58,615 nucleotides of DNA from Ministeria vibrans ATCC 50519 (GCA_943704425.1 CALSCP010000439.1:1-58615); one strand, 5' to 3'. Counted from the first letter of the stretch, positions 723-55,400 are shown. Numbers and translations are program-made. Notes: generated from the sequence alone by a model not told the origin.

Positions 723-931
723 GAATAAAACAAATAATTATTAATAATATTATTCTAAATTATTCGGGTCGACGAAAATCAGTTCATTGTCAAAATTTGA
801 TTTCATTGCAACTTACCAAAATCACTCAAATGTCAATTATTAAATATTATAGATCTTACGAAGAAAAACTTTTATGTACGTACAGGACAGTCAAGAGAGA
901 AAACAAAACACAATCGGAGGCATGCTCATTC

Positions 932-1920
932 TTACGAGAGAGCTCCTTGTTGGCATGCAGCATAGACAACTTCGCCGATGGGCTGAACACCGGCGCTTAC
1001 AAGTGCTGTTAACCAGTCCTACAAAGGAAAAGAAGGTGAGAGCGGTATCTTGACATCATACTACAAAAGTCACAGTGTGTGTCATTATTACCGCCATTTC
1101 CTTTGCAGTATCCGCGACTAAGTGAAACTCGGGCTTTTTCTTGTCGGCGTGCCTCAGCACAAAGTACCGATAGTCGAAAAGGTTGAAACGCTTTGTTACC
1201 TGCCGCGAAAATAACGAATGGATGATATTAGTCTCTCTATCACAAGTCTCTCAATCACTTTGCCTCTCGCTCCCTCTATCCATTTCTATCACTTCGTCTC
1301 TCTCTCTCCATCGGTTATCACTATGTCTCTCTATCACTTTGTCTCTCTCTCCATCACTTTGTCGCTCTCGATCAGTTATCACTTTATCTCTCTCGATCAG
1401 TTATCACTTTGTCTCTCTCGATCAGTTATNNNNNNNNNNNNNNNNNNNNNNNNNNNNNNNNNNNNNNNNNNNNNNNNNNNNNNNNNNNNNNNNNNNNNNN
1501 NNNNNNNNNNNNNNNNNNNNNNNNNNNNNNNNNNNNNNNNNNNNNNNNNNNNNNNNNNNNNNNNNNNNNNNNNNNNNNNNNNNNNNNNNNNNNNNNNNNN
1601 NNNNNNNNNNNNNNNNNNNNNNNNNNNNNNNNNNNNNNNNNNNNNNNNNNNNNNNNNNNNNNNNNNNNNNNNNNNNNNNNNNNNNNNNNNNNNNNNNNNN
1701 NNNNNNNNNNNNNNNNNNNNNNNNNNNNNNNNNNNNNNNNNNNNNNNNNNNNNNNNNNNNNNNNNNNNNNNNNNNNNNNNNNNNNNNNNNNNNNNNNNNN
1801 NNNNNNNNNNNNNNNNNNNNNNNNNNNNNNNNNNNNNNNNNNNNNNNNNNNNNNNNNNNNNNNNNNNNNNNNNNNNNNNNNNNNNNNNNNNNNNNNNNNN
1901 NNNNNNNNNNNNNNNNNNNN

Positions 1921-2006
<86 letters not shown>

Positions 2007-7689: not shown

Positions 7690-8229
7690 TAGGAATAAAT
7701 TGAAGTAGGAAGAATACAACCCATTTAGTAATGATACAAATGAAATAAGCAGTGATTCAGTCGCCACGCGAAAACAAATCAACGAAGTAAACAAAAGAGA
7801 ACAAAATAATAATATTTTATGTAGGAGCAAGAAGAGTAAATAATAGTAGTAATCTGATACTTATGTATCTGAAATATTCTTAATTGCATTGTATTACTCT
7901 TGTTGTATGTAAATTTTTACGTTTTTGAGTAAATTTCTTCCCAAGTTGAATGATCAAGTTGGATGCCATCTCTTTATTTATTCTCTTCCCCCAGTCCCCT
8001 CCCCTGATCCCTTTCCCCCTCCGATCTTCGAGATCCGTCCTCGGGCCCTTCCTCCTCCGCTATCATGGATATATCCTTCGTCTTTGTCCTAGGAGATCCA
8101 AATGTAATTCGAATTATTTATTTTGGAAATGTCTTCTTCTTCTTCAAAGTAGTTCAAACTCAAATAATTCATTATTCAATATTCACTTTTTTTTTGAAGA
8201 AAACACTACACAGGAGACCTCATACTATC

Positions 8230-8639
8230 ATGTCAAAGCTTACACTTACGTACTTTAACCTTCTTGGCCGCGCTGGATCCACCCGAGTGGCTTTGAAAAA
8301 CGCCGGTAAAAAATTGCGGCGCATCAAATAATATTTTGTTTGTTTGCTCACCTGTGTACGGCTCACTGCGCAGGAATCGACTTTGAGGACGAGCGGATAG
8401 ACTTTGCAGCGCTTGTTGCGCGACGGGGTGAGGCGGGCGCCAGCGACGATGTGCCGCTTGGAAGCCTTCCGGTGATGAAGTTTGCCGATGGTACAGTGCA
8501 TGCGCAAAGCGGCGCTCTGGCACGCTGGGCGGGCGCGCAGGGCGACAAGCCCATGTACCCGACCAAGGACCTTGCAAAGATGCTCCTTGTCGACGAGGTG
8601 CTTGAGACGTGCGCCGACATGTTTTCGACTGCGCCGCAG
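8230..8639 (+). CDS. Glutathione S-transferase (sigma-like), 5' part; 3' end lost in gap
   Basis: MSKLTLTYFNLLGRAGSTRVAL|GIDFEDERI...PLGSLPV...AQSGALARWAG. A GT donor at 8640 is followed by (TAA)n and the N-gap. Confidence 0.9.
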
Positions 8640-8660
8640 GTCAGTTGGACACTCAACACA

Positions 8661-8683
8661 AATAATAATAATAATTATATTTT

Positions 8684-8773
<90 letters not shown>

Positions 8774-8790
8774 TATTATTATTTATAATA
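8661..8790. repeat. (TAA)n microsatellite abutting N-gap 8794-9682
   Basis: Directly visible. Confidence 0.95.
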
Positions 8791-9760
8791 TTGNNNNNNN
8801 NNNNNNNNNNNNNNNNNNNNNNNNNNNNNNNNNNNNNNNNNNNNNNNNNNNNNNNNNNNNNNNNNNNNNNNNNNNNNNNNNNNNNNNNNNNNNNNNNNNN
8901 NNNNNNNNNNNNNNNNNNNNNNNNNNNNNNNNNNNNNNNNNNNNNNNNNNNNNNNNNNNNNNNNNNNNNNNNNNNNNNNNNNNNNNNNNNNNNNNNNNNN
9001 NNNNNNNNNNNNNNNNNNNNNNNNNNNNNNNNNNNNNNNNNNNNNNNNNNNNNNNNNNNNNNNNNNNNNNNNNNNNNNNNNNNNNNNNNNNNNNNNNNNN
9101 NNNNNNNNNNNNNNNNNNNNNNNNNNNNNNNNNNNNNNNNNNNNNNNNNNNNNNNNNNNNNNNNNNNNNNNNNNNNNNNNNNNNNNNNNNNNNNNNNNNN
9201 NNNNNNNNNNNNNNNNNNNNNNNNNNNNNNNNNNNNNNNNNNNNNNNNNNNNNNNNNNNNNNNNNNNNNNNNNNNNNNNNNNNNNNNNNNNNNNNNNNNN
9301 NNNNNNNNNNNNNNNNNNNNNNNNNNNNNNNNNNNNNNNNNNNNNNNNNNNNNNNNNNNNNNNNNNNNNNNNNNNNNNNNNNNNNNNNNNNNNNNNNNNN
9401 NNNNNNNNNNNNNNNNNNNNNNNNNNNNNNNNNNNNNNNNNNNNNNNNNNNNNNNNNNNNNNNNNNNNNNNNNNNNNNNNNNNNNNNNNNNNNNNNNNNN
9501 NNNNNNNNNNNNNNNNNNNNNNNNNNNNNNNNNNNNNNNNNNNNNNNNNNNNNNNNNNNNNNNNNNNNNNNNNNNNNNNNNNNNNNNNNNNNNNNNNNNN
9601 NNNNNNNNNNNNNNNNNNNNNNNNNNNNNNNNNNNNNNNNNNNNNNNNNNNNNNNNNNNNNNNNNNNNNNNNNNNNNNNNNNGGGGGGGGGAAGGTGTGG
9701 GGTGTGGGTGGGTTGTTGGTGGACAATATCGGTGATCGGTGGAGTAGGGAGGGAGCTTAC

Positions 9761-12405
9761 TCGCGAACAGAAGAGACGTCCCATGCTCCAATGGGCTGGT
9801 TGAAGTCCGCTGCGTTTTGAAACATGCTCTCCATGGTCGTCACGCGACTCGTGTCCCATGCGCCAATAGATGCGTTGAACTTGCTGTCTGAAAACATATT
9901 CTTCATTGAAAACACCTAAGCAACAACAGAGACGGATTCAACAACAGACGGATTTTGGAGGGATAAGCCAGAGTCAAACCGTTTGGCCGGGTGCTCGACC
10001 CCTCTTACGTTGCTTGTATTCCATTGATGGAGGTCTCGATTGAAGTTTGAAGAAGAGAACATACTCTCCATTGTACCGCACTACACGTCAGAGAGAGAGA
10101 GAGAGAAAAGAAAAAGGGAGAAAGGACAACGTGAGAAAAGAAAGAATGGGAAAAACACAAAGTGATAGGGGGAGAAAAATAGAAGAGAGGGAGAAATAAT
10201 GTAATGGAGAAAATTAAAGAGAGAACAAAGCGATAGAGAAAGCGGAGTGAGAGAAGAAAAGAGTGATATGGATTCGCATGCAGTGCATCTGTCGCTTACA
10301 CTGTGTGTATCCCACGCGTTGATTTCCTGATTGAACTCAAACGTGTCAAAGAACATGAATGCCATGGTCGACACCTAAAAGGGGGGGGGCATGAGACAAA
10401 ACGAAAATGATCAAAACACTTTTTTTTTTGGCTCTGCCTGTTTTAGTACCATTCCTGTGTTGAAATGGGCGAGAGCTTGATTGAAGAGGAAAGCTTCCTG
10501 GAACATGGCAGCCATAGATGTTGCCTGAGAAGGAGGAAAAAAACACACAACGCGTGCACGTGAGCCATGGACACACCCCTTTTCATTTAGTTTTTTCGTC
10601 ACTCACTGATCTGGTGTCAAAGTCAAGCGGATAATTGAAAGTGGACGCTTCGTAGAACATAAACGAAAAATCAGACACCTAAGACACGCAGAGTACACTT
10701 TGATCAAAAGAAGCAAAACAACAGCAAAGAAGAAGAAGTACCTTTGAGGTGTCCCATGAGCCAAGAGCGCTACTGAAGGACGCCGCCTGGTAGAACATGC
10801 CCTGCATGGTCACAACCTAAAAAAGATTGTTATTTCCTCCTGACACCCAGCGCTTACATATATTTATCATCGTTATTATTATTATAATTAATAATAACTT
10901 ATATATAACACAGATACTCACCACTCACACCACAAAGACACACAAAGACCAAATACACACAAAGATACACACACACACATTGTACATTTCCTGTGTTCCA
11001 TTGATCCAACGGCTGATTGAAAGCTGTCGCCAAATGGAACATATAGTCCATATGAGTCACCTGAGCGAGTCAAAGACGAACACGTATTAGGGGGAGACAA
11101 AACACTTGTTATCCCTTACTTGGCTGACATCCCAGGCATTAAAGTTGCCTTGTGTGTCGACGCCCGACTCCTTAAATGCGGCCGTAAGAGTCGTCGTACC
11201 AAGTAGGATAGGCTGGTCTGTCGCTGTGATCTTGAGGTTGGTGCAGCCCTCAAAGTAGCCGCCGCTATTGCCCAGTTGCAGCGGGCCCCACGCATCCACC
11301 GAGACAATCAACGAGGCATACTCATTGGATTGGAAAGACCAGCCGTCAATGATGCCCGTTACTTCGACGACATAAAAGCCAGTCATCGAGTACATGTGTG
11401 ATGCGTTGGGATCGTTGTACGCTGACACGGACACGGTACCACTGCCGTCGCCATAGTTGACTGAGAAATTGTAGTTGCTACCAGTTGAACCAGGGATAAT
11501 TAATGAGAAGAGATTCCAAGGAAATTCCAAGAGAAGACATTTCCAATAATGGAGAAAACGGTGACAAAAAAACAATTAAATTATTAATAATTATTATTAT
11601 TTAATTACCCGTCTGAGCGGAGAGGAAGAGCAATGATGCCACCTGCTGGAGTGGACCAGGTCGTGATGAAGCTTGTGAGTGGGGTTTTCACGGTGATGCT
11701 GAAGGTGCACTCGGCACTGCGACCGATCGAGTCGGTCGCCAGATAAGTGACACGGGTCGTGCCCACTGGAAATGCTGTGTTGTTTGTGTGACTCACAGAG
11801 AGCGAAACGGAAGTGTCATCCATTACAACGGGGTCTTCCCAGGTCGCCACAGCCGACACGGTGGTCCACAAAGTCTGATTTCGGGGACATCCCGAAGGGA
11901 ATTGTGGGGGTGTCGAGTCGATGGTGCAGGAAATGTTGAAGAGACAAAGACCGCGACGAGTGCCGCCGTCGCCGAGTGCGACCAGGAAGACGGGCGTGAC
12001 GCCCGCAGGGAAGAGTGTCACGCTGGAGGTCGCCGAAGACACCCACTCACTCACTGCCTCGCCGCTAGCGGCGGTAGGCAAGGTCCACTCGGCGAGGCAG
12101 TGCGAGCCATCGGTGAACAAGGTCTGCGATAACGGGCAATTGTCGAGCGCAATCAGAGTGGCGGCGGCGCACGAGCCCTCCAGAGTCTCCATCCTTGTCA
12201 CAAGCTCGGATATCATTGTGCCACACATGGCCTCTGTGGCAACCGCCTCGCCGTTCTGCGTCAACCGGCCGAGAACGGTGACATTGCCGCCTGTGTCAGG
12301 TGCGAGGATGACGCTCCCATCAACACTATATATCTCTGCCTCTCCTTGCACTCCCAAGGCGACTCCCAGTAGCACAACAAGTGCTAGCGGCGCGCAGCGG
12401 AGCAT
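9761..12405 (-). CDS. Secreted/surface protein: signal peptide, cubilin-N-like coiled-coil module, 2x HYR, PKD-like cap, DUF285/BspA-type 25-aa repeats; 3' end in gap
   Basis: Exons 12405-11609, 11477-11120, 11060-10986, 10816-10742, 10678-10607, 10524-10450, 10374-10300, 10080-10009, 9915-9761; all GT-AG and in frame. HYR: DSTPPQFPSGCP..FPVGTTRVTYLATD..CTFSITV. Repeat consensus V.TM..MF..A..FNQ.L..W(D/N)T. Confidence 0.9.
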
Positions 12406-40497: not shown

Positions 40498-43400
40498 TCA
40501 AATAAAAGACTCATCATTTTCAACTGGAGTCATCTCAGGGGAAGGTTCAGTTGATTGGAAGCCCATACTCAACGGCACCGTCCTCGTCTCTGATGAAACG
40601 CCTACGCGAGGGAACTCCTCAAAATGAGCATCTCTACTCGATTCGGTGAAATTGTTCGAGTCGTCGTCATCATCCTGGCCAATGACAGTACGGTGCACAG
40701 GATTATCGCTTGAAGTCGGTGGTGCTGAAAGAGAGCTTCCTATTGAAGTCCCGGCAGAACGGGGGTGACTGTCCAAACCGACAGCCTCCACAAGTTCCAT
40801 CTCCAAAGTGGTTTTCTCCACCTGACTTTCATTTATGCTGCGTACGTTGATTTTCGTGCTCGTCTTTCGCTTTCGAGGACATTTCCACCACAGCAATGCA
40901 AGAGCGGCCACAACAACAACGACCACCACAACTCCAATGATGATACCAAAGCTCGATCCAGACGTCAGCTGAGCCTCACATGTGACGCCCGTGTAGCCAG
41001 CAGCACACGTGCAGTTGAAGCCCGTGGCACCTTCGGGAGCGCACTCCGCGCCGTTCAGACACGGATACGATGTGCAGCCGTTCTGCTCAAAAACCGCGAA
41101 CGAGGTCGCCTCCGCAAACGCATAATAGTCCTGTGCACCAGTGGCTCGGCGACGCCCAGCAAATGTGACGGGAAAGCGCTGAATCCACGGGCCAGTGCCC
41201 TGCGTCGCGTACAGCCCAGTTCCCGATGGCAGTGCCGGCAGACCCACAGTCGTCGAGCCGTTCACGAAGAAGTACGGGCTCACAGCAGGCGAGGCAGGTG
41301 GACTCGCATTGGTGTCGGGCACAAAGACCGAGTCGGGCGACGGTCCATAATCAAACGCGATGGCCGTGTACGTCACAACTGTCACGTTGACAGCCTGGTG
41401 CGTCGGCGAATTCGAACTCGGGACATGGACGGAAGTACCAGGTGACGGCGATGGAGGAATGACTCGGCGAGTGTACGTTGCACAGAGACGGCCACGATAG
41501 TTGGTCTGAGGCGAGGGACACGCGCACGTGAAGTCATCGACCGCCACAAAGCGCGAGTACGGCTGTGTCCAACAGACACCATTGTGGCACGGATTCACTG
41601 GCAGGCATGGGCTTCGGACTTGGCAGAATTCGCCGACCCATTCGCTCGAGCATGTGCAAAAGCCAGTCGCTGGGTGGCACGTCGCCCCATTTTGACAGGG
41701 TGAAGAGACACACAGGTCACAAGTGTCTCGGAGTCTTGGCCACCCGTACACACAATGGCACTTGTAGTGACCGAAATTGTCAATTTTGTGACAGGTTCCG
41801 CCGTACTCACACGGAAAAGACGCACACCCATCGCTCATTTTGCATTGATCTCCCCATGTGCCCGACGGGCAATCGCATGTGAACGACCCAACGGGATTCG
41901 ACGAGCGACGACATGTGCCGCCATTTGTGCACGGACTCGATTCGCACGCCACGTGCTCTAACTCGCATAGAGTTCCAATGTAGCCAGGGGGACAGACACA
42001 CCCAAACGAGCCAAATTCGTTGTGGCAGTGTCCCCCGTTCAGACAAGGACTCGACTTACACTCGTCGATGTCCTCTTCACACCAAGCGCCTGTCACTCCC
42101 GACGGGCAATCACATTGGACAGCAGACGGAGAGCCACGAACGGGAGGGTCTTCAATACATTGTCCGCCGTTTTGGCATGGTTTCGACAGACACTTGGACA
42201 TATGGTAGTCGCATTGTGCACCGGTGAACTCAGCGCTACAGTGGCAGAGGAACTCGGACGGGAGGTTCTCGCACACACCGACGACACACGGGGAGGACGC
42301 ACAGTGATTGATGAGAGACTCGCACTGAGTGCCAGTGTGTCCCAACACACAGCTGCATACGAACGCGTTCACATCGTCTGAGCAAGTCGCCCCGTTCTGA
42401 CACGGGCTGCTCAAGCACTCATCAATGTTCACAGCGCACTCAACGCCCGTGTAGCCAGGCACACAGGTGCACGTGAAGCCATTCACACTGTCAGTGCAAG
42501 TTCCTCCGGTCTGACACGGACTGCTCAAGCACTCATCAATGTTCACAGCGCACTCAACGCCCGTGTAGCCAGGCACGCAGGTGCACGTGAAGCCGTTCAC
42601 ATCGTCTGTGCAAATCGCCCCGTTCTGACACGGGTTGCTCAAGCACTCGTTCGTGTCCGTGCCACACACTGTCCCTCCGTAGCCCGCAGCACACGCACAC
42701 GTGTAGCCCCCCACAACATCAGTGCACGTCGCCCCGTTCTGGCACGGGCTCGACGAACATTCGTCCGTCTCCACCTCGCAGACCACTCCAAAGAACCCCA
42801 CGCCACATGTGCACGAGAAACCGCACACACTGTCGACACACGTTCCTCCGGTCTGACATGGGTTGCTTGCGCACTCATCCGTGTTGCTCCCGCACAATAT
42901 GTCCTCCCAACCACATGCACACACACACGTGAACCCGTTTACGTTATCATTGCACGTCGCCCCGTTCTGACACGGGCTGCTCAAGCACTCATCAATGTTC
43001 ACAGCGCACTCAACGCCCGTGTAGCCAGGCACGCAGGTGNNNNNNNNNNNNNNNNNNNNNNNNNNNNNNNNNNNNNNNNNNNNNNNNGGGCTGCTCAAGC
43101 ACTCATCAATGTTCACAGCGCACTCAACGCCCGTGTAGCCAGGCACACAGGTGCACGTGAAGCCATTCACGCTGTCAGTGCAAGTTCCTCCGTTCTGACA
43201 CGGGCTGCTCAAGCACTCATCAATGTTCACAGCGCACTCAACGCCCGTGTAGCCAGGCACACAGGTGCACGTGAAGCCATTCACACTGTCAGTGCAAGTC
43301 GCCCCGTTCTGACACGGGTTGCTCAAGCACTCATCAATGTCCGACTCGCACAGCAGACCGGTGTAGCCGGCGAAACAGGTGCACGAAAAGAAGTTGGACT

Positions 43401-46400
43401 GGGCAATGCTGGGCGACACGGTGATCGCCTCAACGCGCATCAAGGGACGTGTTGACGTCAGACCCGACGCATTCGTCAGGGTGCACCCGTCGGCTGCGAC
43501 CGTCGTCGACGTCGCCACGGCCGCAAGTGTTCCCGACAAAATCGACGCAATCGACACGTCAATGGTGAGCGGCAACAGAGGCGCACGGAAACAGAAATTA
43601 ATCACCATCGTGTCGACTCCATTGTGCACAAAAGGCGTCGTAAAAGTGAACGAGTTCCAGCCGGAAACAATGGTGTGCGGCGAGGACACGAGCACGTCTG
43701 TGGCGCCCGTCATGTCAATGAAAGCAGGACCCGTCTGCACCGGCGCCAGGGTCGTCTCCGTTGTGTGCAGCACGCTGATGGACACAATGGCACTGCCGGG
43801 GATCCCTGTGGCAAGGTGCAGCTCGAGACTGGTCACGTCGCCCGTGCGAATCTGCTTGAGATCCGACGCACGCACAAGCACCTGCAGACGACCGGCCGTG
43901 TGCGACCTGAACGGCAACACACCAACAATTTCCGTCTCGGTCGCTTGCGCCACTGTCACCACATTGGCACCGGTGACCGCCAGGAAACCCTCGACACACG
44001 AGCCAAAGTTCTGGCAGGGTGTCGACAGACACTCGTCAATGTCCGTCTGGCAACGCACGCCAGTGAAGCCCGCCAGACAGTCACACACGTACAGTCCGGG
44101 TGTGCTCGACTCGGTGCAGGTGCCGGCGTTGACACACGGCGACGAAAGACATTCGTCAATCTCCGTGTCACACAGTGTGCCGGTGTAACCGGCACTGCAG
44201 GTGCACTCAAAGCTGACAATGAGATCGCCACAGACGCCATTCTCACACGGATTCGAATCGCACTCGTTCACCTCCGTCTCGCAATGGATGCCCGTGTAGC
44301 CAGCCAGGCAGCTACACGCAAACGCGTCGGCCAAGTTCTGGCACGAGGCGCCATTGACACATGGCACCGAGGCACACTCATCCGTGTCGCCCGCACAGAG
44401 TGTGCCAAAGAAGCCGTCGGAGCAATTGCATGTGAAGCCGTCCACACCGTCAATGCACGTCGCACCGTTCTCACACGGCTCACTCACACACTCATTCACG
44501 TCCGTCTCGCAGTGCAAGCCCGTGTAGCCGGCGTGGCACGCACACGAGAAGGAATTTAGATGGTCCACGCAGGTGGCACCGTTGACGCACGGGGCACTCG
44601 CGCACTCGTCCACGTCCGTCTCGCACACATCGCCCTCGGCACCATTGGGGCACGAGCACGCAAAAGCACCGACCGACTGGAAACAGACACCGCCACGCTG
44701 GCACGGCGCACTCGCACACTCGTCAATGTCCGTCTCACACTTCGCGCCCGTGTAGCCAGTCGGGCAGGTGCACGTCAGCGACGCCACCAGGTCTTTGCAT
44801 GTTGCGCCATTCTCACACGGATTGCTCGCACAATCGTCAATGTCTGTCTCGCAACGCCTGCCCACATAGCCAATGTGACACGAGCACTCAAAAAGGCCAA
44901 ACAGGTTCACACAAGTGCCATCGTTGACACACGGGTTGCTCGAGCACTCGTCAAAGTCCTGGTCGCACAAGGTCCCCGTGTACGGTGCCGTGCACACACA
45001 GAAGAAGTTGTTCAGGCCATCTTCGACGCATGAAGCGTCATTCTTGCATGGTGTCGACTGACATTCGTTGACGTCCACTTCGCACTGTGAACCGGTCGAG
45101 CCGGCGTCGCAAACACATACGTAGCCGTTGTTTCCGTCCATGCAGGTGCCGCCATTGTGACATGGCATCGAAAGACACTCGTCAACGTTTGTCTCGCACG
45201 TCTCACCCGCAAACCCAGTCACACACGAGCAGCCGTACGTGTTTACGGCGTCGATACAGAGTCCACCGTTCTGGCACGGCGACGAATCACACTCGGACTC
45301 GCAGTTGCTGCCACCACTGGCAATGCTCACGGGGCAACCAGTGCACACGTAGCTTTCGACACCGTCAGTGCAAGTGCCTCCCGAGCCGCACGGGTTGCTT
45401 GCACAATCGTCCATGTTCGTTTCGCAGGTGAGACCGGTAAATCCGTCAACGCACGCACACGTAAACGTGTTGACAGCGTTTCCCTCCGTACACGTGCCTC
45501 CGTTGGCACACGGCTCGCTGTCGCACTCGTTGATGTCGCTTTCGCACACCGAGCCGGTGTAGCCCGCCTCGCAAATGCACGAGTAGAAGTTGGGAATGAA
45601 CATGGCGGCAACCACACCGGACACACCAACGCGAATGGCCGGACGGAAAGTGGAAATGCCAGGGTTCAGGTCACAGGCCAGGTCCGAAAGGTCACCACCG
45701 ACGCCGGGCAGTGCAAACGTGCTGCGGCCCGAGATGACAGTCTCGGCGCTCACCTTGGTCTGAATTGCCGAGGCGGTTGTCTGGCACAGGTTGACAATGA
45801 TGTTGCTCCTGCCGTCGTAGACAAAGGGAGTTGTGAATGTGAAGGTGTTCCAGCCGGACACGAGCACAATGGGCGCCGCGTCAAGAACCGTCACGAAAAC
45901 CGTCGAGTTGTCCAACGGCGCCAATGAAGTGGCCGTTGTGTGCTTGATGCTGATGGTGAGCGCGTCGACAGGACCCTGAATGTCAAAGGTGAGGAATTCG
46001 ACGTTGAGCGACAACGACGAAATGGGACCACTGAGTTGACTTGTGGCCGCGGCCGTGAGCAGATCCTGCTGTGAAAAGAAGATCTGCTGACGGGCATGCG
46101 TGCCCTGGAACACATTGAGATTGGTGAACGCGACCGAGTTGGGCACAACGCTCACAGTGACCGTCCCCGTGGCCGAACCAGTGCCCTCGACACAGGCACT
46201 GCCATGGATGCACGGCGACGACTCGCACTCGTCGATTTCAACAAGGCAATTGTCACCAGTGAAACCCTGAGCACACGTGCACACATAGGTATTCGGTTGG
46301 GCGCCCTGAGCACACGTGGCACCGTTGCCACACGGGTCACTTGTGCACTCGTCCACATCGTTGGTGCACTGGGCGCCCGAGAAACCGTCTGTGCACGAAC

Positions 46401-49400
46401 ACGAATAACCATTCACCTGGTCAGTGCAAGTGCCGCCGTTGGAACACGGCAACGAAAGGCACTCGTCGATATTGGTCTCACACCGAACACCCTGGTAGCC
46501 ATCGATGCAAGAACAAGCATACAAGTCGACACCGTCCACACAGGTGCCGCCGTTGGTGCATGGCGACGAAGCGCACTCGTTGATGTCCGACTCGCACTGG
46601 ATGCCAGTGAAGCCCGGAGGGCACGTACACTGCCAGAAGTCACCGGTGGAGTCCTGGTCGCAGGTGCCGCCGTTGCTGCAAGGCGACGAAGTACACTCGT
46701 TGATGTCAGTCTCACACATGACGCCGGTCCATCCGGTCACGCAAGTACACTGCCAAAAATCGGGTGTCGCACCCTGGTCACATGTGCCACCGTTGGAGCA
46801 TGGTGATGAGGCACACTACAAGGTAGTAGAAGAAGAAAAAGGATCAGAGACAGAGAGAAACGCAGGAACTGTCATATTCTTCCTGTTTTACCTCATCAAT
46901 GTCAGTCTCGCAAACGTCACCGGTAAATCCGGCGTGGCAAAGACACAGAGGCTGCGCGGTCGAAAAATGCACGTGGGGGCCAATGTAAAGACTAGCGCCG
47001 ACGGTGCCGGTCAGTGAAGTGGAGTCGATGTTGCTGATGAAGTTGAGCACATTGGTGAAGCGGAAGCCGCGAGTGATCGAGCTCGTCGACTCCACAGTGA
47101 ACTGGTTGCTAATGATGTAGCCATCCGAGGTCATGGGGAACTTGGCCTGGATGGTGTACACAGAGTTGGCATTGACAGTGACGCGGGGCGACAGGAACGT
47201 CTTGAGGATCTTAAAACCCTCGGGCGACGTCTCAGAAGGACCCGAAACGAGAATGGTCGCCTGAGCGACAATGGCGCCGCCAGTCAGGACCGCAACCTCG
47301 TGGGTTTGAGTCACGTCAAAAATGGCGTTAGAGGGCACGTAGAGGGCCAGGAAGTCGATGTCCTTGGTGACGGTAGGCTGGAACTCATAGCCTACAATGA
47401 CGTTCTCGCTCGCGGAGCTCGAGGGCTGCGAGGTGATGAGGGTCTCCACAAGAGGGCCAACGTTGATCTCAGTCGGTTGGCATGTGCCAGCGTTGGTACA
47501 AGGGNNNNNNNNACAATGACGTTCTCGCTCGCGGAGCTCGAGGGCTGCGAGGTGATGAGGGTCTCCACAAGAGGGCCAACGTTGATCTCAGTCGGTTGGC
47601 ATGTGCCAGCGTTGGTACAAGGGTTTGAGTTGCACTACGGAACGAAGAAATGAGTTCGTACAAAACAAAATTGACGACGCTAACGTTACCTCCGAGACGG
47701 GAGACTCGCAAATGTCGCCGGTAAAGCCAGCCGGACAGATACATTGCCAGAAGTTCGCCATGAGCCCTTGGCTACACAGACCTCCATTGAGACAGGGTTC
47801 CGACAAACACTAAGCACAAAAAAATTAATAATCATTAATCTTTCCTAATGACGAGGAAAAAATACAATCGGGTACCTCGTTGGTGTCAGTCTCGCATTGG
47901 TCGCCGGCAAACCCGATAACGCAAGTACAGTCGTAGAGGTTGGGTTGGTTTCCCTGGCTGCAGGTGCCACCGTTGCTGCAGGGCGACGAGTCACACTCGT
48001 TGATGTCTGACTCACACTGCGTGCCGGTGAAGCCAGCGGCACAGCTGCACTGCCAGAAGTCGTACGAGGAGCCCTGGTCGCAGGTGCCGCCGTTGGTGCA
48101 CGGCGACGAGTCGCACTCGTTGATGTCCGACTCGCACTGGATGCCAGTGAAGCCCGGAGGGCACGTACACTGCCAGAAGTCACCGGTGGAGTCCTGGTTG
48201 CAGGTGCCGCCGTTGCTGCAAGACGACGAGGTACACTCGTTGATGTCAGTTGCGCACATGACGCCGGTCCATCCGGTCACGCAAGTACACTGCCAGAAAT
48301 CGAGCTGGCTGCCCTGGTCGCATGTGCCACCGTTGGAGCACGGCGACGAGTCGCACTCGTTGATGTCGGATTCACAGGTCACACCGGTGGAGCCCGCAAC
48401 ACATTCGCAGGTGAAGCCGTCGAAAAGGTCGATACAGGTGCCGCTGTTGGTGCATGGCGACGAGGCGCACTCGTCGATGTTGGTTTCGCAGTGTTCACCG
48501 GTGGTGTACGAATGACACGAGCAAGTGTACTGGTCTGGAATGACATCGCCACCAAAGATGGCATTAGGGCCGAAGTAGGTTGTGGCCGAGAACGAACCGA
48601 AGAAGTAGGGGTTGTGGGGATCCTGGAGGTGTGGATCAAAAGCATTCAAAACAAACAGCTTGTGGCCTTCGACAAAGTGGATGCCACGCTGGTATGTGAA
48701 GATGTTGGAGGCAATCCAGTGGTCGTTGGCACCAACATTCTTGTACACAGCCTGCAGCGTGTAGGTCTCGCCAGCAACAAGGGACACCGGCGACGAGAGC
48801 GTCTCGTAGTGGAACTCTCCATCAATGCTGTTGGGCGGATCGGCAAAATCCCGAACGACCGACGAGTTGCCGATAGTGACGTTGGCAAGGAGGTTGAACG
48901 CTGAGTCGAACAGGCCAACATCGTGTGTCTCTGTCAGCATGTTGGGGTTGGTCCAGTGCAGACCGAGGTGGCTCACCGAGCGGCCCGCGTACACATTGGT
49001 AAACGTGTAGCCTGTAAGCACTGCGATATTGGACGCACTCTCTTCTTGGCCGGTCTCCCAGCCGGTGGCCACGGGCTCGTTCGCGGCCGAATCGGGCGTG
49101 CAAGTGCCGTCGTTTGTGCATGGACTCGACTCGCAACCGTGTAACTCGATTTCGCAATGGTCTCCCATGTATTCGCTTGAGCAGCTGCACGTGTACGTGT
49201 TGATGCTCGTCGTGACGCACATGTCACCAGCGACGCCAGGTGTATTGGCAATGCGGTCGGTGGCGCGACCGCTGCAGTTGCACTTGAAGCACTTGAGCGA
49301 GTCACCGTTGGCGTCGAGGACGTAGCCTGCGGAGGGGTTGCCGTTGAGCCAGCCGAGCACCGCCTGGTTCGTAGGCATGCCGTAGTAGCCATCCTCGCAG

Positions 49401-52400
49401 CTGTCGCACTCCATGCCCGTCGTGTGTCCCAGGCAGTTGGTGCACGTGAGCGCACCCGATTCCTGCTTGGCCGCACAGTTGTTCTGGTTCGACCTCTGTT
49501 CAATGTTGTTGTTGCAGATGCACGGAATGCACGGGTAGAAGTCGTTGCCTTTGCAGCCAATCGTCGTCGAGTCGTCGGCAATGAGCAAGTCGTTGCCCGA
49601 GTTGTCGGCGCACACGGCCGGACGGCCAAAGTAGGCCATGTTGTTGCAGGCGGCGCACTGGCGATCCGACTCGTCGTAGGCAACGCCCGAGTAGCCCTGC
49701 ATGCTGGCCGGATCGTGACGCGGGCAGTTGCAACGAATGTAGGCGCTGTGGTCGGCCGAGCCCTGGAGCGTAGCAATGGCAGTGGCGTCGAGGAGCGACT
49801 CGTCGAGCACGCAGCGTGTGGACTGCGCGAGACCATTCTCAAAGGCACACTTGAGGTAGGCGTCGAGCGCGTTGGGGAAGTTAGCCTGGAACGAGTTGTA
49901 GGCGTTGGGCACGCCGGTGCTGGCCGCGTCCACGTAGTGGTTGCATTTGCACGGCACACAAGGAATGCCGTCGGCGGGGCTGCCGTAGTAGCCGGCGTCG
50001 CACAGCTCGCAACGGAAGCCATGCGTGTGCGCCGGGCAGTTGGTGCACATACCCGAGTCGGTGACACACTCGTTGTTGCCCGTGCCAAAGCACTGCTGCT
50101 CGCACGGACGGCAGGCGCTCGTCACCGTGTCCATGTTGCAGTTGGTACCGTCAACGAGGTCGCACGCGCGACACACGTCGGCCGACGCGTCAAAGCTGCC
50201 GGCCATGTGGCGGAAGTAGTTGGCCGCACACGTCTCGCACTGGCCCTGCGGACCGTTGACGGTCCAGTTGCCGCACTGGTGGCACACAGAGCTGTAAGGG
50301 TCGCAGATGCCGTCGCCCGAGTTTGCGTCCGCCTTGGAGTGACCATTGCAAAAGCACGGCGAGCAGTTCTCAAAGCGGATCGCCTCGGACTGCGCGGCAT
50401 CCGGGTTGGTGCCATCGGAGTCGGCGTTCGGGTAGAGGTTGTGGTTGTCGCGGTAGTTGGAGGCAATGCACTTTTCACAGCGGTTCTCAGCGCCATTCTC
50501 CGTGTTGTCACCGCAGCCGGAGCACACACCAAAGTTGCTGCAGGTCGACGAGTGGCCGTAGCAGGCGCACGGGGCACAGTCAACGCCGTTAGTCGCGTCT
50601 CCCCGGGTGCTCCAGGTGTTCACCTTGCACGACTCGCAGTTGAAGCCTTCCGAGTTGGACACGCCCGTGCACGTGCACTCACCGCCTACGGGGTTGCAGA
50701 AATCCTCGCCAGTCGCGTCAGTCGTTGTGGCATGGCCATTGCAATCACACTGGGTGCAGTTGTGCGCAAGATTGACAGCGTTCACGCCAACGAAGGGACG
50801 GTAGTAGCCAGCGTCACAGCCACCGCAGTTCTGACCGTCGGTGTGGTCGTTGCACGGCTGCGGGTTACCATTGTAATTGAGCTCGCAGCTGCCTCCGAGC
50901 ACGGCGCACTCGTTGAAAGCGTACGACTTGTGACCATTGCACTGGCACACGAGGCAGACAGAGCCATTGCGCGCACCGCCCGCCTCGTTCCAGTAGCCAA
51001 CCTGGCAGGCTTCGCAGTTGTCGCCCATGACTTGATCATCCGGGTCACAGTTGCAGAGACCACCCTTGGGGTTGCAGACGGCCTTGGTGCCCGCGGCCCA
51101 GCCATGATCAGGGTACTCGATGGCGAGACCGTGCTGGTTGCAGGCGCACGGCTGGCAATCGTCAGTGAGGTCAACGTTGCCCTGGGCGTCGACGGGGCGG
51201 AAGAAGCCGGGCACGCACAGTTTGCAGTGCTCGCCCATGGTGTTTCCATCGCACGGCAGCGCGTTGCCGTTGCGGTCAAACTCACAGTGACCACCAGTGG
51301 TGTGGCACTCGTCCTGGTTGTCACTGTCCGTGTACTTCTTGTGGCCGTAGCACTGGCACGCCTGGCAGTTGACGCCGTTGGTCGAGTCACCCTGGGCGCT
51401 CCAGTAGCCGGTCTCGCAGAACTCGCAGTGGGGACCAACGGCGTGGTCACCGGGAGTGCAGTGGCAGCCGCAGAAGTCCTTGTCACAGGTGTCGGCACCG
51501 CTGCTCGTCTTCACGACGGCGTGCAGGTTGCAGTCGCAAGCGGTGCACACCTCCTCGCGGCACACCTCGTAGGCGAGGCGACCCTCGGTGGCGTCGCACG
51601 AGGCACGGCAGAAACCGTCGACGCAGGTCTCGCAGCTAAAGCCCTTGGTGTTGGTTGAGGCCTCGCAGCGGCACTCGCCCGTGTCGAAAGCACAGCCCTC
51701 GGGGCAGTTACGCTTGTCCGAGTCCTCGCACAGGTCGAAGATGGAGTGGGTGTTGCAGGTGCAGGGGATGCAGGGGCCCGTGGGCGGGAAGAAGACCTGG
51801 AATTGGTCGGGACGGGTGGCACCCATGGCGCCCGACAGACCGTTGTAGGTGAAAGAGCCGGCCTCGATTTCGACGGGGGTGATCTCGGGCAGAAGGGGAC
51901 CGTCGCACTTGTGGTTCTCATCCTCGCTCTCGCAGTTGAACGACTCGACGGGGCTATCGTTCTGGATTTCGGCACGGTAGCCGGGCTGGCAGAACTGGCA
52001 CGAGGTACCCGTGGTGAAGTGACCGCAGTCCTGAACAATGTCCTTACTACCGCTCTCCTCGACGAAGCAGAATCCGGTGTTGGTGTCGCAGGTGCGCGAG
52101 TGACCGTTGCAAAGGCAGTAACCGGTGACACGCAGCTCACGCACCGAGTAGTAGCGGTAGCGCACATCACCAAAAGCACTCATCTGGGCAAAACGCACCG
52201 AGATGTAGCGCCAGCCAAAGTTGGCAGGCTTGTCAAGAACCTCACGGGTGTAGCCCTCGACGAGGAACTCAATGTCGCACGCCTTTCTGTTGAAGGCGCT
52301 CACACAGGTGGTACCCTTGGTGAAGACGGGGCCGCCGGCCGGGTCGTACTGGTTCTCAGAGCCAGTCAGATCGATCCACGGCTCGCTCTCATTGTTACGC

Positions 52401-55400
52401 ACCCAGAGTTCGAGACGGGAGATGAAGGGCGACGAGTCGGCCTGACGGTTGGGCTTGGGCAAAAACGACGCCAGCGGGTTCTGGAAGGGACCGGTGCCGG
52501 ACGGGACGGGAAGAGGGTAGTTACCGAGACGCACGGTGAGCGTCGAGATGCCGAACTCACCGAGAAGATCGAGTTCCAGACGGCGGTAGGTGGGGCGCAG
52601 ATCGAGGTTGGTGCACTCGAGAACGTTCTCGGCGATCTGCGCGGCGTTAGTGGGGCCGCAGCGGAGCGACGCCCACTCGTTAAGATCCGAGGCGGAACCA
52701 GCAACGTTGAGGTTGGCATCGGTGAGCCAGAACTCGCGGTCGGTCGAGTGAGCAAAGGCCGTGGCGGACACGGCGGCGTCAATGGAGAACTCCCACTCGC
52801 TCGTGGCCGTGTTGTACAAGGCCTTGAGGCAACGATTGTTGCTGTTGTGGACGCACAGCTTGACACGATCGGTGGCAACGAAGGGAAGATCCTCGGCGGC
52901 CGGGTCGGCGACCGTGGCGGCAATGACATCCCACAGGGCGGTGTCGTCGTTGGTGGCGATGCGACCACCACCAAGGTACTCGACGGTGGCGGACGAGGCG
53001 GTGTCGTGGTGGGTGAGGAAGGCCTTGATGGACGCCTGAATGGTGGTGAAGCCAGGGTTGACGGGTGCCGTGGACATGGGGCAGAAGTTGTTGGAGCCGG
53101 TCATGGTGGTGAAGACACCGCAGGTGCCGGCAACGGCACCGGCCGCACCGAGCGCCGCGATGAGCTGTGCGGAGGTGACAGCCTCACCGGAGATGACGTT
53201 GCGAGCGGTCACGACGACATTCTGGGGGTTGTTCTGAGCGGTGATGGTGGCCGAGATGATGTTGATGGCGACATTTGTGAAGCCACCGTGAGCGAGAAGG
53301 GCATTCTTGACAATGGCGATAAATTGCGACTCGAACGTGGCCGCGTTGGAGATGAACGAGTTGGTGAATGTGACCTTGACATACTGATCGGTGAGGGTCC
53401 AGTACGTGTCGACACCGGCCGTGTCGAGGGCGTCAAGGTCGATCTGATAGCCCGAGGCGTCGATGATGCCTGCGAGGTAGTCGCGGTGGTCGGGGTCGGT
53501 GCTGACCACACGGAACATGGAGACCTTTTGGTCCTGGAAGTTGCCATCGCTCGGGTACGACCAGTAGTTGGAGACCTTCTTGCCAAAGGCAAGGTTCTCA
53601 ATTTTGGTGTTTTGCAAGAGAATGTACTCACCGGCGTCAAAGGTGAAGATGATTTCTTGTGAAACGACCACAGTGCCATTGGAGGCAACGGCACGGACGC
53701 GGAACTTGATGCTTCGGTAGGAGGAGACGATGCTACGAATGGTGAGTGTAATGAGACGGAGCGCCGGAATGTTCTGGAGGTTGACGAGGCCGGCCGAGAC
53801 GAGGTTGCTCTGGTCGACGTCCTCCCAGTTGGTGTCCTCGAGGTTGGCCACCTGGTAGGTGAACGACTGGAGAGTGTCGTACTCGTTGACGGGGTCGGTG
53901 CTAGCCTGGACGTTGTACGAGTCACCCTCGGCAAGATCGGTGGAGGGCGCCGTCTCGGAGAGCTTCACGGTGAAGACGACAGGCGAGTCGCATGTGTAGG
54001 ACTCTATGCCATCGTGACAAATGTCACCATTCTGACACGGGTTCGAAGCGCAGTCATCAATGCTGGTCGAGCATGTGGTGTCGGTGAAGCCGCTGACGCA
54101 GTTGCAGGTGTACGAGTTAACACCATCGTTGCAGCTGGCACCATTCTGACACGGGTTCGAAGCGCACTCGTTGATGTCAGTCTCGCAATGCTTTCCCGTG
54201 TAACCGTTGCCGCAGACACACGTATACGTGTTAGCGCCATCAGCACATGTGCCACCGTTTTCGCAAGGGTTCAAGGCGCAATCGTCAATGTCAATGGTCT
54301 CGCAGTTATCACCGGCAATGCCATTGACGCAGGTACAATCGGTGATGGACTCGATGTTAAGACGAATGTTGATCACAACGGCGTCACCAAGATAGGGAAA
54401 GTCTGGCGCAATGGGAGTGAGTTTGTCTTTGCCAGGCGGAGTGCACGGTTCGGCGGAGATGTACGAAGTGCCCGTCTCAAAGTGGGCGTCGCCGTTGATG
54501 GTAAAGAACACATGGGCGTTTCGCCCGGAGAGGGTGGGGCTGTCGAGCTCGGCGACAATGTAGTCGCCGCACGTCACCGTGACCGGGCTAGGAAGAGCCA
54601 CCGAGTGGTACTGTTCGCCGGCGAGGTAGGCGGTCTGGAGCGTCGTGAGTGGCACGGTTGCCTCAGACAGCGTCGAGAGTTGTGAAAAGGCAGGAGTGCC
54701 AACATTTCCAGCGGCAATGGAAGACAGACGCAGGGTGAGAGTCTTTCCAGACACGTCACCGTCTATGCTCTGAATGCCAAACTCAATGTGAGTAACATCA
54801 ACGGAAGTACCACTGTAGTTGGCGTCGCCACACGGCTCGTAGATGCGGAAGAGACGGTTGGCGAACGTGTGCGACCCAGAGCCGCAGCTCACACCGCGAA
54901 ACACGTTGAAATCGGAGAAGTCGGTTGCTTGGTTCTGGAAGAGCACGGCCGCGTCACCACCGCTGCAAGTGCCGCCGTTGAGGCAGGGCGTCGCATTGCA
55001 CGATCCAACGAACGTGTCGCACACGTTGCCACCGTAGCCTTCGGAACACACACAAGTAGCTCCACTGCAGCTTCCGCCGTTTGCACAGCCAGTTCCAGGG
55101 CAGGTGTTGTCACGGCGTTGGCGCTACGAAAGAATTAGCGTGAGTGCGTTATGGAGCAAACGAGAAAAGGAAAAGTGCACTGAGACGATTTCGTATTGCC
55201 ACAGGGCATGGAATAGTTAATAGTTCAATAATCAATAAGGATGTAAAGGTAGGAGCAACTGACAAGAAGTCAGAAAAACGAATAGCCTGTGATCAGCGCA
55301 TAATAAAAAACTAAATGAACGAAGCTGTCAATCAAATAAAGACGAAGAAGGGCTTCCCAGTTCCCATCATGCCTTAATGATTAGGTATACCCAATTACAC

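What the first reader, a model, noticed from the sequence alone, without database searches (positions are those of the whole stretch)
43384..54964. EGF modules used as a display scaffold: five bacterial-type beta-sandwich domains inserted at the same Cys3-Cys4 hairpin
Seen: five EGF repeats of the giant membrane protein are split at exactly the same position, after the third Cys and before C-x-C. The inserts are 54964-54338 (209 aa; CNATPCLNGGTC...CTCVNGIAGDNC), 49099-48524 (192 aa), 47479-46946 (178 aa), 46191-45580 (204 aa) and 43995-43384 (204 aa). No introns lie at the insert boundaries, so this is not simple exon shuffling. The inserts fall into at least three different families. Inserts 2 and 3 look DUF4082-like (GY.F...V..LG/LA...TH.V.....LLA..TI....L.SPV.L.A..TYT). 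Inserts 4 and 5 are paralogues sharing VSGWN(T/S)FTFTTPFV.(D/N)G....VN.C, a motif I recall from Bacteroidetes secreted proteins. Insert 1 is a third type. Established: Cys3-Cys4 flank the major beta-hairpin of EGF. Inference: the hairpin turn tolerates whole-domain insertion, giving a rigid cbEGF rod with laterally projecting, horizontally acquired binding domains, possibly a prey/glycan-capture or adhesion receptor. Repeated use of one site by unrelated cargo suggests a reusable design that ordinary annotation would miss, because the split EGFs and inserts score poorly.
Basis: partly seen in the sequence, partly recalled or inferred. Interest (0 to 1): 0.88.

Follow-up and report, generated by a model that had tools for sequence, protein, structure and literature searches.

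The report
Lectin-like domains nested inside EGF modules
A giant membrane protein of an unidentified small-genome eukaryote has five ordinary EGF modules that each carry a whole beta-sandwich domain looped out of the same hairpin; this is real and probably translated, but it repeats with new parts the design that laminin uses for its L4 domain.

Summary
On the minus strand, five EGF modules are each split between Cys3 and Cys4 by 178-209 residues, at the coordinates given. The third one crosses an 8-N assembly gap flanked by a 111-bp duplication.

- **Inserts are coding.** They lie in frame, have exon-like GC3 (0.68-0.76) and show dN/dS of 0.14-0.22 against paralogues. I could not get RNA evidence.
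- **The split EGF refolds in a model.** An AlphaFold model of EGF-splitEGF(insert 4)-EGF superposes on contiguous Notch EGF11-13 (Z 11.0, rmsd 2.4 Å). The insert is a lectin/CBM/PHR-like jelly roll.
- **Origins of the inserts differ.**
  - Inserts 4/5 belong to an unnamed family otherwise found in bacterial giant surface proteins, several with T9SS sorting tails.
  - Inserts 2/3 belong to a paralogue family, several members of which score as DUF4082.
  - Insert 1 has no relatives that I could find outside this genome.
- **The module recurs.** All three types occur across the genome, about 40 matches, and almost always in the same split-EGF context. I saw a fourth insert type on another contig, and a metagenomic eukaryote carries the insert-4/5 type.

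The design itself is known: laminin L4 domains sit between Cys3 and Cys4 of LE modules (PMC5338690). This scan had already reported the same architecture on other DNA of this genome.

Verdict: a new variant of a known kind. Horizontal origin is plausible but unproven, and the function is inferred.

The parts
54302..55000 (-). Split EGF 1: N half 55000-54965, insert 1 at 54964-54338 (209 aa, orphan beta-sandwich type), C half 54337-54302
   Evidence: Translation. The Pfam EGF profile (positions 1-12) hits the N half. Three further copies exist in the genome, two of them in a split EGF. The model is of low confidence, pLDDT 54.7.
48488..49135 (-). Split EGF 2: N half 49135-49100, insert 2 at 49099-48524 (192 aa, DUF4082-like), C half 48523-48488
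   Evidence: DUF4082 scores E 0.052 here, below the cut-off. At family level, 6 of 11 members hit DUF4082. The nearest Atlas cluster is DUF4082, score 0.94.
46910..47634 (-). Split EGF 3: N half 47634-47599, an 8-N gap at 47505-47512 with a duplicated 111 bp, insert 3 at 47479-46946 (178 aa, the same type as insert 2), C half 46945-46910
45544..46227 (-). Split EGF 4 (calcium-binding-type IDEC prefix): N half 46227-46192, insert 4 at 46191-45580 (204 aa, unnamed bacterial-type jelly roll), C half 45579-45544
   Evidence: AlphaFold model with pLDDT 74. The three EGFs superpose on Notch EGF11-13, and the insert is lectin/CBM/PHR-like.
43348..44031 (-). Split EGF 5 (IDEC prefix): N half 44031-43996, insert 5 at 43995-43384 (204 aa, paralogue of insert 4), C half 43383-43348
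47810..47875 (-). Intron between EGF modules (gt..ag, AT-rich)
   Evidence: GC is about 0.28, against 0.56-0.60 in the inserts.
47635..47689 (-). Intron between EGF modules
46816..46891 (-). Intron between split EGF 3 and the next EGF
49200..52700 (-). Laminin-N-like region and array of laminin-type (8-Cys) EGF modules in the same protein
   Evidence: Read from the translation (C-x-C-N-G-H type repeats). I did not run it against Pfam. Another note on this window, s1-781050, describes it.
40885..40950 (-). Transmembrane helix followed by a basic stop-transfer stretch and a cytoplasmic tail; stop codon at 40498-40500

Best explanation
The gene encodes a giant type-I membrane protein. It has a laminin-N-like part with laminin-type EGFs, at least 42 canonical six-cysteine EGF modules, a transmembrane helix and a cytoplasmic tail.

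In five EGF modules the four-residue turn of the major beta-hairpin, between Cys3 and Cys4, is replaced by a complete jelly-roll beta-sandwich of about 180-210 residues. The sandwich is of the lectin/CBM/PHR-like class. The two EGF halves come back together as a normal EGF, so the EGF rod stays continuous and the extra domain projects sideways.

The nested unit (half EGF, sandwich, half EGF) behaves as one evolutionary module. It has been duplicated many times in this genome. Three sequence types occur in this gene and at least four in the genome.

One type (inserts 4/5) descends from a domain family that is otherwise found in giant bacterial surface proteins. This is consistent with a single transfer followed by expansion.

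By inference only, the projecting domains are the ligand-binding parts, probably binding glycans or other surface molecules, and the EGF rod is the spacer.

**Shown:** the split, its fixed position, purifying selection on the inserts, family membership, and a model-level reassembly for insert 4.
**Inferred:** disulfide pairing, translation into a stable protein, binding function, and horizontal origin.
For: - **Position of the split.** Sequence and Pfam mapping of the EGF halves. No other EGF loop in this gene carries an insert.
- **Coding nature of the inserts.**
  - dN/dS is 0.14-0.22 at dS 0.76-1.13 against the nearest paralogues.
  - GC3 is 0.68-0.76, while real introns are 55-76 nt long at 28-40% GC.
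  - The frames are open in every copy.
- **Reassembly of the split EGF.** The model has pLDDT 74.
  - Foldseek against 7alj_A, Notch EGF11-13: TM 0.81, rmsd 2.4 Å across the whole model.
  - VIA against 2vj3_A: Z 11.0, rmsd 2.4 Å, 112 of 120 residues aligned over model residues 1..312.
- **Fold of insert 4 (VIA).**

| Match | Z |
|---|---|
| phi812 baseplate protein | 11.1 |
| Cwp84 lectin-like domain | 9.5 |
| carbohydrate-esterase CBMs | 8.8-9.0 |
| PHR domains | 7.4-8.3 |
| laminin beta2 LF | 6.3 |

- **The module is a unit.** 12 of 12 insert-4-type copies, 10 of 10 insert-2-type copies and 3 of 4 insert-1-type copies that I inspected sit in the same split EGF.
- **Single clade.** All nested insert-4-type copies, including one from another eukaryote, form one clade among about 200 bacterial domains, SH-like support 92.
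- **Bacterial relatives.** The profile search found 1370 hits.
  - 370 of 378 domains in the top 150 proteins have no EGF-like flank on either side.
  - The proteins carry T9SS tails.
  - Source names include Ignavibacteria, Bacteroidia and Victivallales.
Against:
- Only insert 4 gave a usable model. The insert-1 model has pLDDT 54.7, and its EGFs do not superpose well (rmsd 12.6 Å). Insert 2/3 was not folded.
- No ligand-binding residue or sugar site was identified. The authors who solved the laminin beta2 LF structure state that no function is known for the L4 or LF domains (PMC5338690).
- Eukaryotes are thinly sampled in the libraries searched, so the apparent bacterial bias may be partly a sampling effect.
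Confidence: 0.8

Rival explanations
1. One ancestral nested module. A single beta-sandwich was inserted once into an EGF hairpin in this lineage. All present insert types are its descendants, diverged beyond sequence recognition, so the shared site reflects common descent and not repeated use.
For: - The insert-4 model and the weak insert-1 model hit the same structures: PHR, Cwp84 lectin-like, phi812 baseplate, PBCV-1 capsid protein and esterase CBMs.
- Atlas features place inserts 1 and 2 near the same clusters: DUF4082, PHR and Lectin_like.
- Each type clearly spreads as a unit.
Against: - Inserts 4/5 are far closer to non-nested bacterial domains (E down to 2e-37) than to the other nested types (hhalign probability below 1%).
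- Several insert-2-type copies match the Pfam DUF4082 model at up to 1e-11.
- Descent from one nested ancestor would predict the opposite ranking.
Confidence: 0.25
2. Repeated independent insertion or cassette replacement. Different domains, at least some acquired from bacteria or phages, were placed into the same hairpin several times. That turn is the one place where an EGF tolerates a domain whose two ends lie side by side.
For: - There are three sequence-unrelated types in this gene and a fourth on contig C320.
- Laminin reached the same site with L4 in a different EGF subtype (PMC5338690).
- Another note of this scan reports a cupredoxin at the same site; I did not check it.
Against: - The number of independent events is small, 3-4.
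- No transfer donor was identified.
- The sister of the nested clade is poorly supported, 73.
- Insert 1 has no outside relatives.
- A shared fold class leaves common descent open.
Confidence: 0.5
3. The inserts are not part of the mature protein: they are unusual introns, assembly chimeras or bacterial contamination joined to EGF sequence.
For: - The region contains two assembly gaps (47505-47512 and 43040-43087), one with a duplicated flank.
- No RNA evidence was obtained.
Against: - The inserts are in frame and free of stops in about 40 copies on many contigs.
- They evolve under purifying selection with exon-like codon composition.
- They lack gt..ag boundaries. Known introns here are 55-76 nt long and AT-rich.
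- An independent metagenomic contig from another eukaryote has the same nested layout, with ordinary short introns inside the insert.
Confidence: 0.03

Closest known systems
Laminin (and perlecan) L4 / domain IV nested in a laminin-type EGF (LE) module
   Same: [quoted passage not shown]
- The module array is predicted to continue undisturbed (PMC5338690).
- The protein here also has a laminin-N-like part and an LE array.
   Different: - The host here is the ordinary six-cysteine Notch-type EGF, not the eight-cysteine LE.
- The inserts are not Laminin_B/L4 by sequence. There was no Pfam hit, and the structural match to laminin beta2 LF is only Z 6.3.
- Several insert types are used, five times in one protein and about 40 times in the genome.
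Laminin beta LF domain placed after a truncated LE5
   Same: It is a CBM35-like sandwich that interrupts an EGF-type array without breaking the packing of the neighbouring modules (PMC5338690).
   Different: LF follows a truncated module; it does not sit inside the Cys3-Cys4 loop. The closest parallel in this gene is the EGF truncated after Cys4 at about 53990, not the five inserts.
Pfam DUF4082 (PF13313)
   Same: Six of 11 members of the insert-2/3 family hit it, best E 1.1e-11. Six places in the genome pass the curated cut-off. The nearest Atlas cluster is DUF4082.
   Different: The window's own copies score 14 bits (insert 2) or nothing (insert 3), against a cut-off of 28.4. I found no report of DUF4082 inside an EGF; only two papers in the library mention the family at all.
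Unnamed domain of giant bacterial surface proteins, several with T9SS sorting tails (Bacteroidia, Ignavibacteria, Victivallales)
   Same: Inserts 4/5 match it with E down to 2e-37. The shared core motif is G-W-N-x-F-x-F-x-x-P-F-x-(Y/W)-D-G-x-S-N.
   Different: - In bacteria it is a free-standing tandem domain next to fn3, PKD, Ig or MAM domains and T9SS tails.
- 370 of 378 bacterial domains have no EGF-like flank on either side, and none has both.
- It has no Pfam or NCBIfam model.
Integrin beta PSI/hybrid/betaI nesting (from general knowledge, not tested here)
   Same: An extracellular cysteine-rich module is split by a whole inserted domain and closed by disulfides.
   Different: The host fold, the insert and the organisms are all different. 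It is cited only as a second precedent for nested extracellular domains.

Membership tests
EGF-like domain (PF00008), host modules | Six cysteines with the spacing C-x4-C-x5-C ... C-x-C-x8-C, and a match to the family profile | tested here: met
   - The halves align to profile positions 1-12/15 and 16/20-31.
- Split EGFs 4 and 5 pass the cut-off (21.7 and 24.4 bits against 21.5). Split EGFs 1-3 are below it because only half the profile is matched at a time.
- The ends of the A4 profile hit solved factor VII/IX and Notch EGFs.
EGF-like domain, host modules | Disulfides 1-3, 2-4 and 5-6, and the major beta-hairpin formed across the insert | tested here: inconclusive
   The model of EGF-splitEGF4-EGF superposes on contiguous Notch EGF11-13 (TM 0.81, rmsd 2.4 Å; Z 11.0). 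Strands 53-56 and 257-260 are in the expected places.
Calcium-binding EGF (cbEGF) | An N-terminal D/N-x-D/N-E/Q-x-C consensus, plus a D/N two residues after Cys3 and an aromatic two residues before Cys4 | tested here: inconclusive
   - The prefix I-D-E-C is present for split EGFs 4 and 5 only. Split EGFs 1, 2 and 3 lack it.
- The aromatic before Cys4 is kept in inserts 2, 4 and 5 (Y/F-x-C).
- The residue two after Cys3 is Glu in 4 and 5.
- Calcium binding itself is not testable here.
DUF4082 (PF13313), inserts 2 and 3 | A score at or above the Pfam gathering cut-off of 28.4 bits | tested here: not met
   Insert 2 scores 14 bits (E 0.052) and insert 3 has no hit. At family level, 6 of 11 paralogues hit (best E 1.1e-11) and six genome places pass the cut-off. 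I therefore file them as DUF4082-like, divergent relatives, and not as scored members.
Laminin L4 / Laminin_B nested in LE | The host is an eight-cysteine LE module | tested here: not met
   The hosts have six cysteines and Notch-type spacing.
Laminin L4 / Laminin_B nested in LE | The insert lies between Cys3 and Cys4 | tested here: met
   The definition is taken from PMC5338690.
Laminin L4 / Laminin_B nested in LE | The insert is homologous to Laminin_B (L4) | tested here: not met
   There is no Pfam hit at E up to 1 and no PDB sequence hit. At fold level there is only a shared CBM-like sandwich, with laminin beta2 LF at Z 6.3.
Unnamed bacterial surface-protein domain (inserts 4 and 5) | Significant profile similarity over most of the domain to the bacterial members | tested here: met
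   There are 1370 hits at E up to 1e-3 and 182 at up to 1e-10, and the alignments cover profile positions of roughly 30-200 of 215. 203 domains have E below 1e-5 and at least 120 profile positions.

The most novel reading that the evidence does not exclude
In this protist lineage the Cys3-Cys4 hairpin of ordinary EGF modules would serve as a general insertion socket. It would have taken up several independent, horizontally acquired bacterial or phage surface-recognition domains. The result would be a large, fast-diversifying family of rod-and-knob receptors for recognising bacteria, prey or glycans. It would also be a living analogue of the step that produced L4-in-LE in the ancestor of laminins.
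Probability: 0.3. Interest if true: 0.75.

Novelty: new variant of a known kind. Interest (0 to 1): 0.55.

Why it matters
- **Generality of the site.** The Cys3-Cys4 turn of EGF-type modules tolerates whole-domain insertion in ordinary six-cysteine EGFs as well as in laminin LE modules. It does so at scale, with several insert families and dozens of copies in a genome of about 30 Mb.
- **A natural system for study.** It offers a way to study how nested extracellular domains arise and spread, and how bacterial surface domains may be recruited into eukaryotic receptors.
- **A template for engineering.** It suggests a way to display a binding domain on a rigid EGF stalk.
- **A possible link to laminin.** The same protein carries laminin-N-like and LE parts, so it may bear on the origin of the laminin L4 arrangement.
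- **An annotation problem.** In practice, domain annotation under-calls both the split EGFs and the inserts: three of the five split EGFs fall below the Pfam cut-off and no insert has a scoring model.

Tried and rejected
**RNA evidence**

**Insert 1**
- The structure model has pLDDT 54.7 from a four-row alignment. Its fold matches are only a hint, and it gives no support for EGF reassembly.
- Relatives outside the genome: none among 5758 word-sharing candidates, none in viral contigs and none in GTDB genome contigs.

**Inserts 2/3**
- No hit among giant proteins by region search.
- No hit in genome contigs with the two-row alignment.

**Across the insert types**
- Profile-profile comparison of the three types was negative, even with 215 rows for the insert-4 family.
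- NCBIfam found nothing. PDB sequence searches found only the EGF halves.

**Limits reached**
The split-EGF census covers only about 290 kb of loci plus the window.
- I considered exon shuffling. The metagenomic relative has introns inside the insert, about 11 and 30 residues after Cys3, but none exactly at the junctions. The question stays open.
- I did not use complex prediction, because the report makes no protein-protein binding claim.
- The organism could not be named with the tools allowed.

Full report
**1. What is in the sequence**

The finding lies on the minus strand, in a eukaryotic gene with very long exons and a few short AT-rich introns.

- The large open frames are 47825-55051 and 40498-46740, with two small exons between them.
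- The introns I could place are 47875-47810, 47689-47635 and 46891-46816. All lie between EGF modules. Another intron ends near 55125.
- From the membrane-distal end, the protein has:
  - a short EGF region that contains split EGF 1;
  - an EGF truncated after Cys4, followed by a long cysteine-poor stretch;
  - a laminin-N-like part with an array of laminin-type EGFs;
  - long arrays of six-cysteine EGFs, at least 42 by pattern;
  - a transmembrane helix at 40950-40885 and a cytoplasmic tail.
- The genome, G000, is 29.7 Mb in 2860 contigs. I could not name the organism.

**2.

- Pfam's EGF profile aligns positions 1-12/15 to the N halves and 16/20-31 to the C halves.
- A profile of the insert-2 family with its half-EGFs hits solved EGFs of factor VII, factor IX and Notch, and only through its first 15-17 and last 18 positions.
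- Inside the EGF arrays of this gene, the only long cysteine-free gaps are these five. No other EGF loop carries an insert.
- One correction concerns the third module. It is interrupted by an 8-N gap (47505-47512) flanked by an exact 111-bp duplication, which is an assembly artefact. Its true N half is at 47634-47599.

**3. The inserts are coding**

The indirect evidence is nevertheless strong.

| Insert, compared with its nearest paralogue | dN/dS | dS |
|---|---|---|
| 4 | 0.14 | 1.04 |
| 5 | 0.17 | 0.86 |
| 2 | 0.22 | 0.76 |
| 1 | 0.15 | 1.13 |

- These dN/dS values are similar to those of the flanking EGFs.
- The inserts have GC 0.56-0.60 and GC3 0.68-0.76, like the neighbouring EGF array. 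The real introns are 55-76 nt long at 28-40% GC.
- Every copy in the genome is in frame and free of stops.

**4. Structure**

- I modelled the natural stretch EGF-splitEGF4-EGF (312 residues) with an alignment of 12 paralogues. Mean pLDDT was 74.
- Foldseek aligned the whole model to Drosophila Notch EGF11-13 (7alj_A) with TM 0.81, normalised to the target, and rmsd 2.4 Å.
- VIA-align gave Z 11.0, rmsd 2.4 Å and 112 of 120 residues aligned for human Notch-1 EGF11-13 (2vj3_A), over model residues 1..312.
- Three contiguous Notch EGFs can only be matched this way if the two halves of the middle module have come together. In the model, then, the rod is continuous and the insert is looped out.
- Residues 59-251 form a jelly-roll sandwich. 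The best matches are:

| Match | Z |
|---|---|
| phage phi812 baseplate protein | 11.1 |
| Cwp84 lectin-like domain | 9.5 |
| Bxb1 tail tip | 9.5 |
| carbohydrate-esterase CBMs | 8.8-9.0 |
| PHR domains | 7.4-8.3 |
| Eph ligand-binding domains | 6.2-6.9 |
| laminin beta2 LF | 6.3 |

- I had no coordinates, so disulfide distances were not measured. Confidence at the junctions is modest, about 60.
- The insert-1 model was poor (pLDDT 54.7). It hits the same list of folds, but that is only a hint, and its EGFs do not superpose well.

**5. What the inserts are**

*Inserts 4 and 5*
- They are 35% identical.
- Their profile found 1370 cluster representatives at E up to 1e-3 among 1.84 billion proteins.
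- In the top 150 proteins, 370 of 378 domains have no EGF-like flank on either side, and none has both.
- Those proteins carry T9SS sorting tails and fn3, PKD, Ig or MAM domains. Source names include Ignavibacteria, Bacteroidia and Victivallales.
- The domain has no Pfam or NCBIfam model.

*Inserts 2 and 3*
- They are 26% identical.
- The window's copies are below the DUF4082 cut-off (14 bits, or no hit). Six of 11 members of their paralogue family hit DUF4082, best E 1.1e-11.
- Six places in the genome pass the curated cut-off. The nearest Atlas cluster is DUF4082, score 0.94.

*Insert 1*
- It has three paralogues in the genome and no relative that I could find elsewhere.
- Its language-model neighbours are phage hypothetical proteins and, further off, Lectin_like, DUF4082 and PHR clusters.

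*Relation between the types*
- The three types are unrelated by profile-profile comparison, with probability below 1%.
- They nevertheless appear to share one fold neighbourhood.

**6. The nested module is a genome-wide family**

- Profiles of the three types find 19, 17 and 4 places in the genome.
- Of the copies I inspected, 12 of 12, 10 of 10 and 3 of 4 sit in the same context, C-x-S-S-P-C-x-N-G-G-x-C | insert | C-x-C-x-x-G-(F/Y)-T-G-x-x-C.
- A pattern scan of about 290 kb of fetched loci plus the window gave 43 distinct split-EGF candidates:
  - 19 of the insert-2 type, 17 of the insert-4 type and 3 of the insert-1 type;
  - two of a fourth type on contig C320 that has no Pfam match;
  - of the remaining two, one looks like a divergent insert-2-type copy and one is a chance match.
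- In a FastTree of 12 own copies and 203 database domains, all nested copies form one split of 15 rows, support 92. The three database members of that split are two fragments of this genome and P0098.
- P0098 comes from a JGI metagenome contig of another eukaryote. Its best identity to this genome is 38%. The contig has GT-repeat introns and several nested copies.
- Each type therefore became nested once and then spread as a unit. The number of independent uses of the site is 3-4, not five or forty.

**7. Origin**

- The insert-4/5 type is much closer to non-nested bacterial domains than to the other nested types, and the insert-2 type is closer to DUF4082 than to the others.
- That ranking argues against a single nested ancestor. 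It favours repeated insertion or cassette replacement at one permissive site.
- The shared fold class, and the long, poorly supported branches around the nested clade, leave common descent open.
- A bacterium-to-eukaryote transfer is the simplest reading for inserts 4/5. No donor was identified, and eukaryotes are under-sampled.
- The absence of introns at the junctions says little, because this genome is intron-poor. The metagenomic relative has introns inside the insert, but not exactly at its ends.

**8. Comparison with what is known**

- They also state that L4 and LF are CBM-like sandwiches, that the LE array is expected to continue undisturbed, and that the function of these domains is still unknown (PMC5338690).
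- The present case is the same design. It differs in three ways: ordinary six-cysteine EGF hosts, different insert families, and far greater multiplicity.
- I found no paper describing a whole domain nested in a canonical EGF, or DUF4082 in an EGF. The library is limited, however.
- This scan has already reported the same architecture on other pieces of this genome, with the same laminin comparison. My tests were run independently on this window and agree. Those notes also mention expression and a cupredoxin insert, which I did not check.

**9. Verdict**

  - nested display on an EGF rod: yes, at model level and for one insert;
  - bacterial-type: yes for inserts 4/5, at family level for inserts 2/3, no for insert 1;
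  - a new design: no.
- This is a new variant of a known kind. Interest is moderate, 0.55.
- Function is inferred from fold class and architecture only: lateral ligand-binding knobs on a spacer rod, perhaps for glycans or bacterial surfaces.

Noticed in passing
window 47505-47512 and flanks 47513-47623 / 47394-47504: An 8-N gap is flanked by an exact 111-bp direct duplication inside split EGF 3. This is an assembly artefact that shifts the apparent frame and duplicates part of the N half and the start of the insert.
   Followed up: yes
window 43040-43087: A 48-N gap lies inside the array of near-identical EGF repeats downstream of insert 5. The repeat copy number there is uncertain.
   Followed up: no
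L032:3256-3942 (-) and L032:892-1569 (-), i.e. G000 contig C320 20001-30000: A fourth insert type (about 202-205 aa, ending in an I-D-D-(L/V) motif) sits at the same Cys3-Cys4 site of two EGFs. It has no Pfam match beyond the EGF halves, apart from a weak CBM_35_2 hint at E 0.14.
   Followed up: partly
L049 (JGI metagenome contig, 5448 bp), e.g. 2009-2914: Another eukaryote carries insert-4-type domains nested in EGFs. Its best identity to this genome is 38%, its introns are rich in GT repeats, and those introns lie inside the insert, not at its ends.
   Followed up: partly
window 53989-53123: An EGF is truncated right after Cys4 and followed by a 289-residue cysteine-free stretch leading into the laminin-N-like part. 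This recalls the way laminin beta LF follows a truncated LE. Another note on this window covers it.
   Followed up: no
window N halves of the split EGFs, e.g. 46227-46192, 44031-43996, 49135-49100: The N halves keep the consensus sites known from Notch-type EGFs for O-glucose (C-x-S-x-P-C) and O-fucose (C-x4-S/T-C). I recall these motifs from general knowledge. I did not check whether the genome encodes the transferases.
   Followed up: no
window 55880-55593 and 55123-55100: A possible first exon carries a signal-peptide-like start (a hydrophobic stretch after M-V-M-P-C-R-R-P-K-R). An R-Q-R-R motif lies just before the first EGF, which could be a furin-type processing site.
   Followed up: no
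G000 genome-wide: EGF modules are hugely expanded. One 301-aa query gave 360 matches on dozens of contigs, inside open frames of up to 6129 codons.
   Followed up: no
window 1-2000 and 8001-10000: These are very AT-rich stretches (GC 0.25-0.37) that include long N runs (1430-1920 and 8794-9682). They contrast with the 0.55-0.63 GC of the exons.
   Followed up: no
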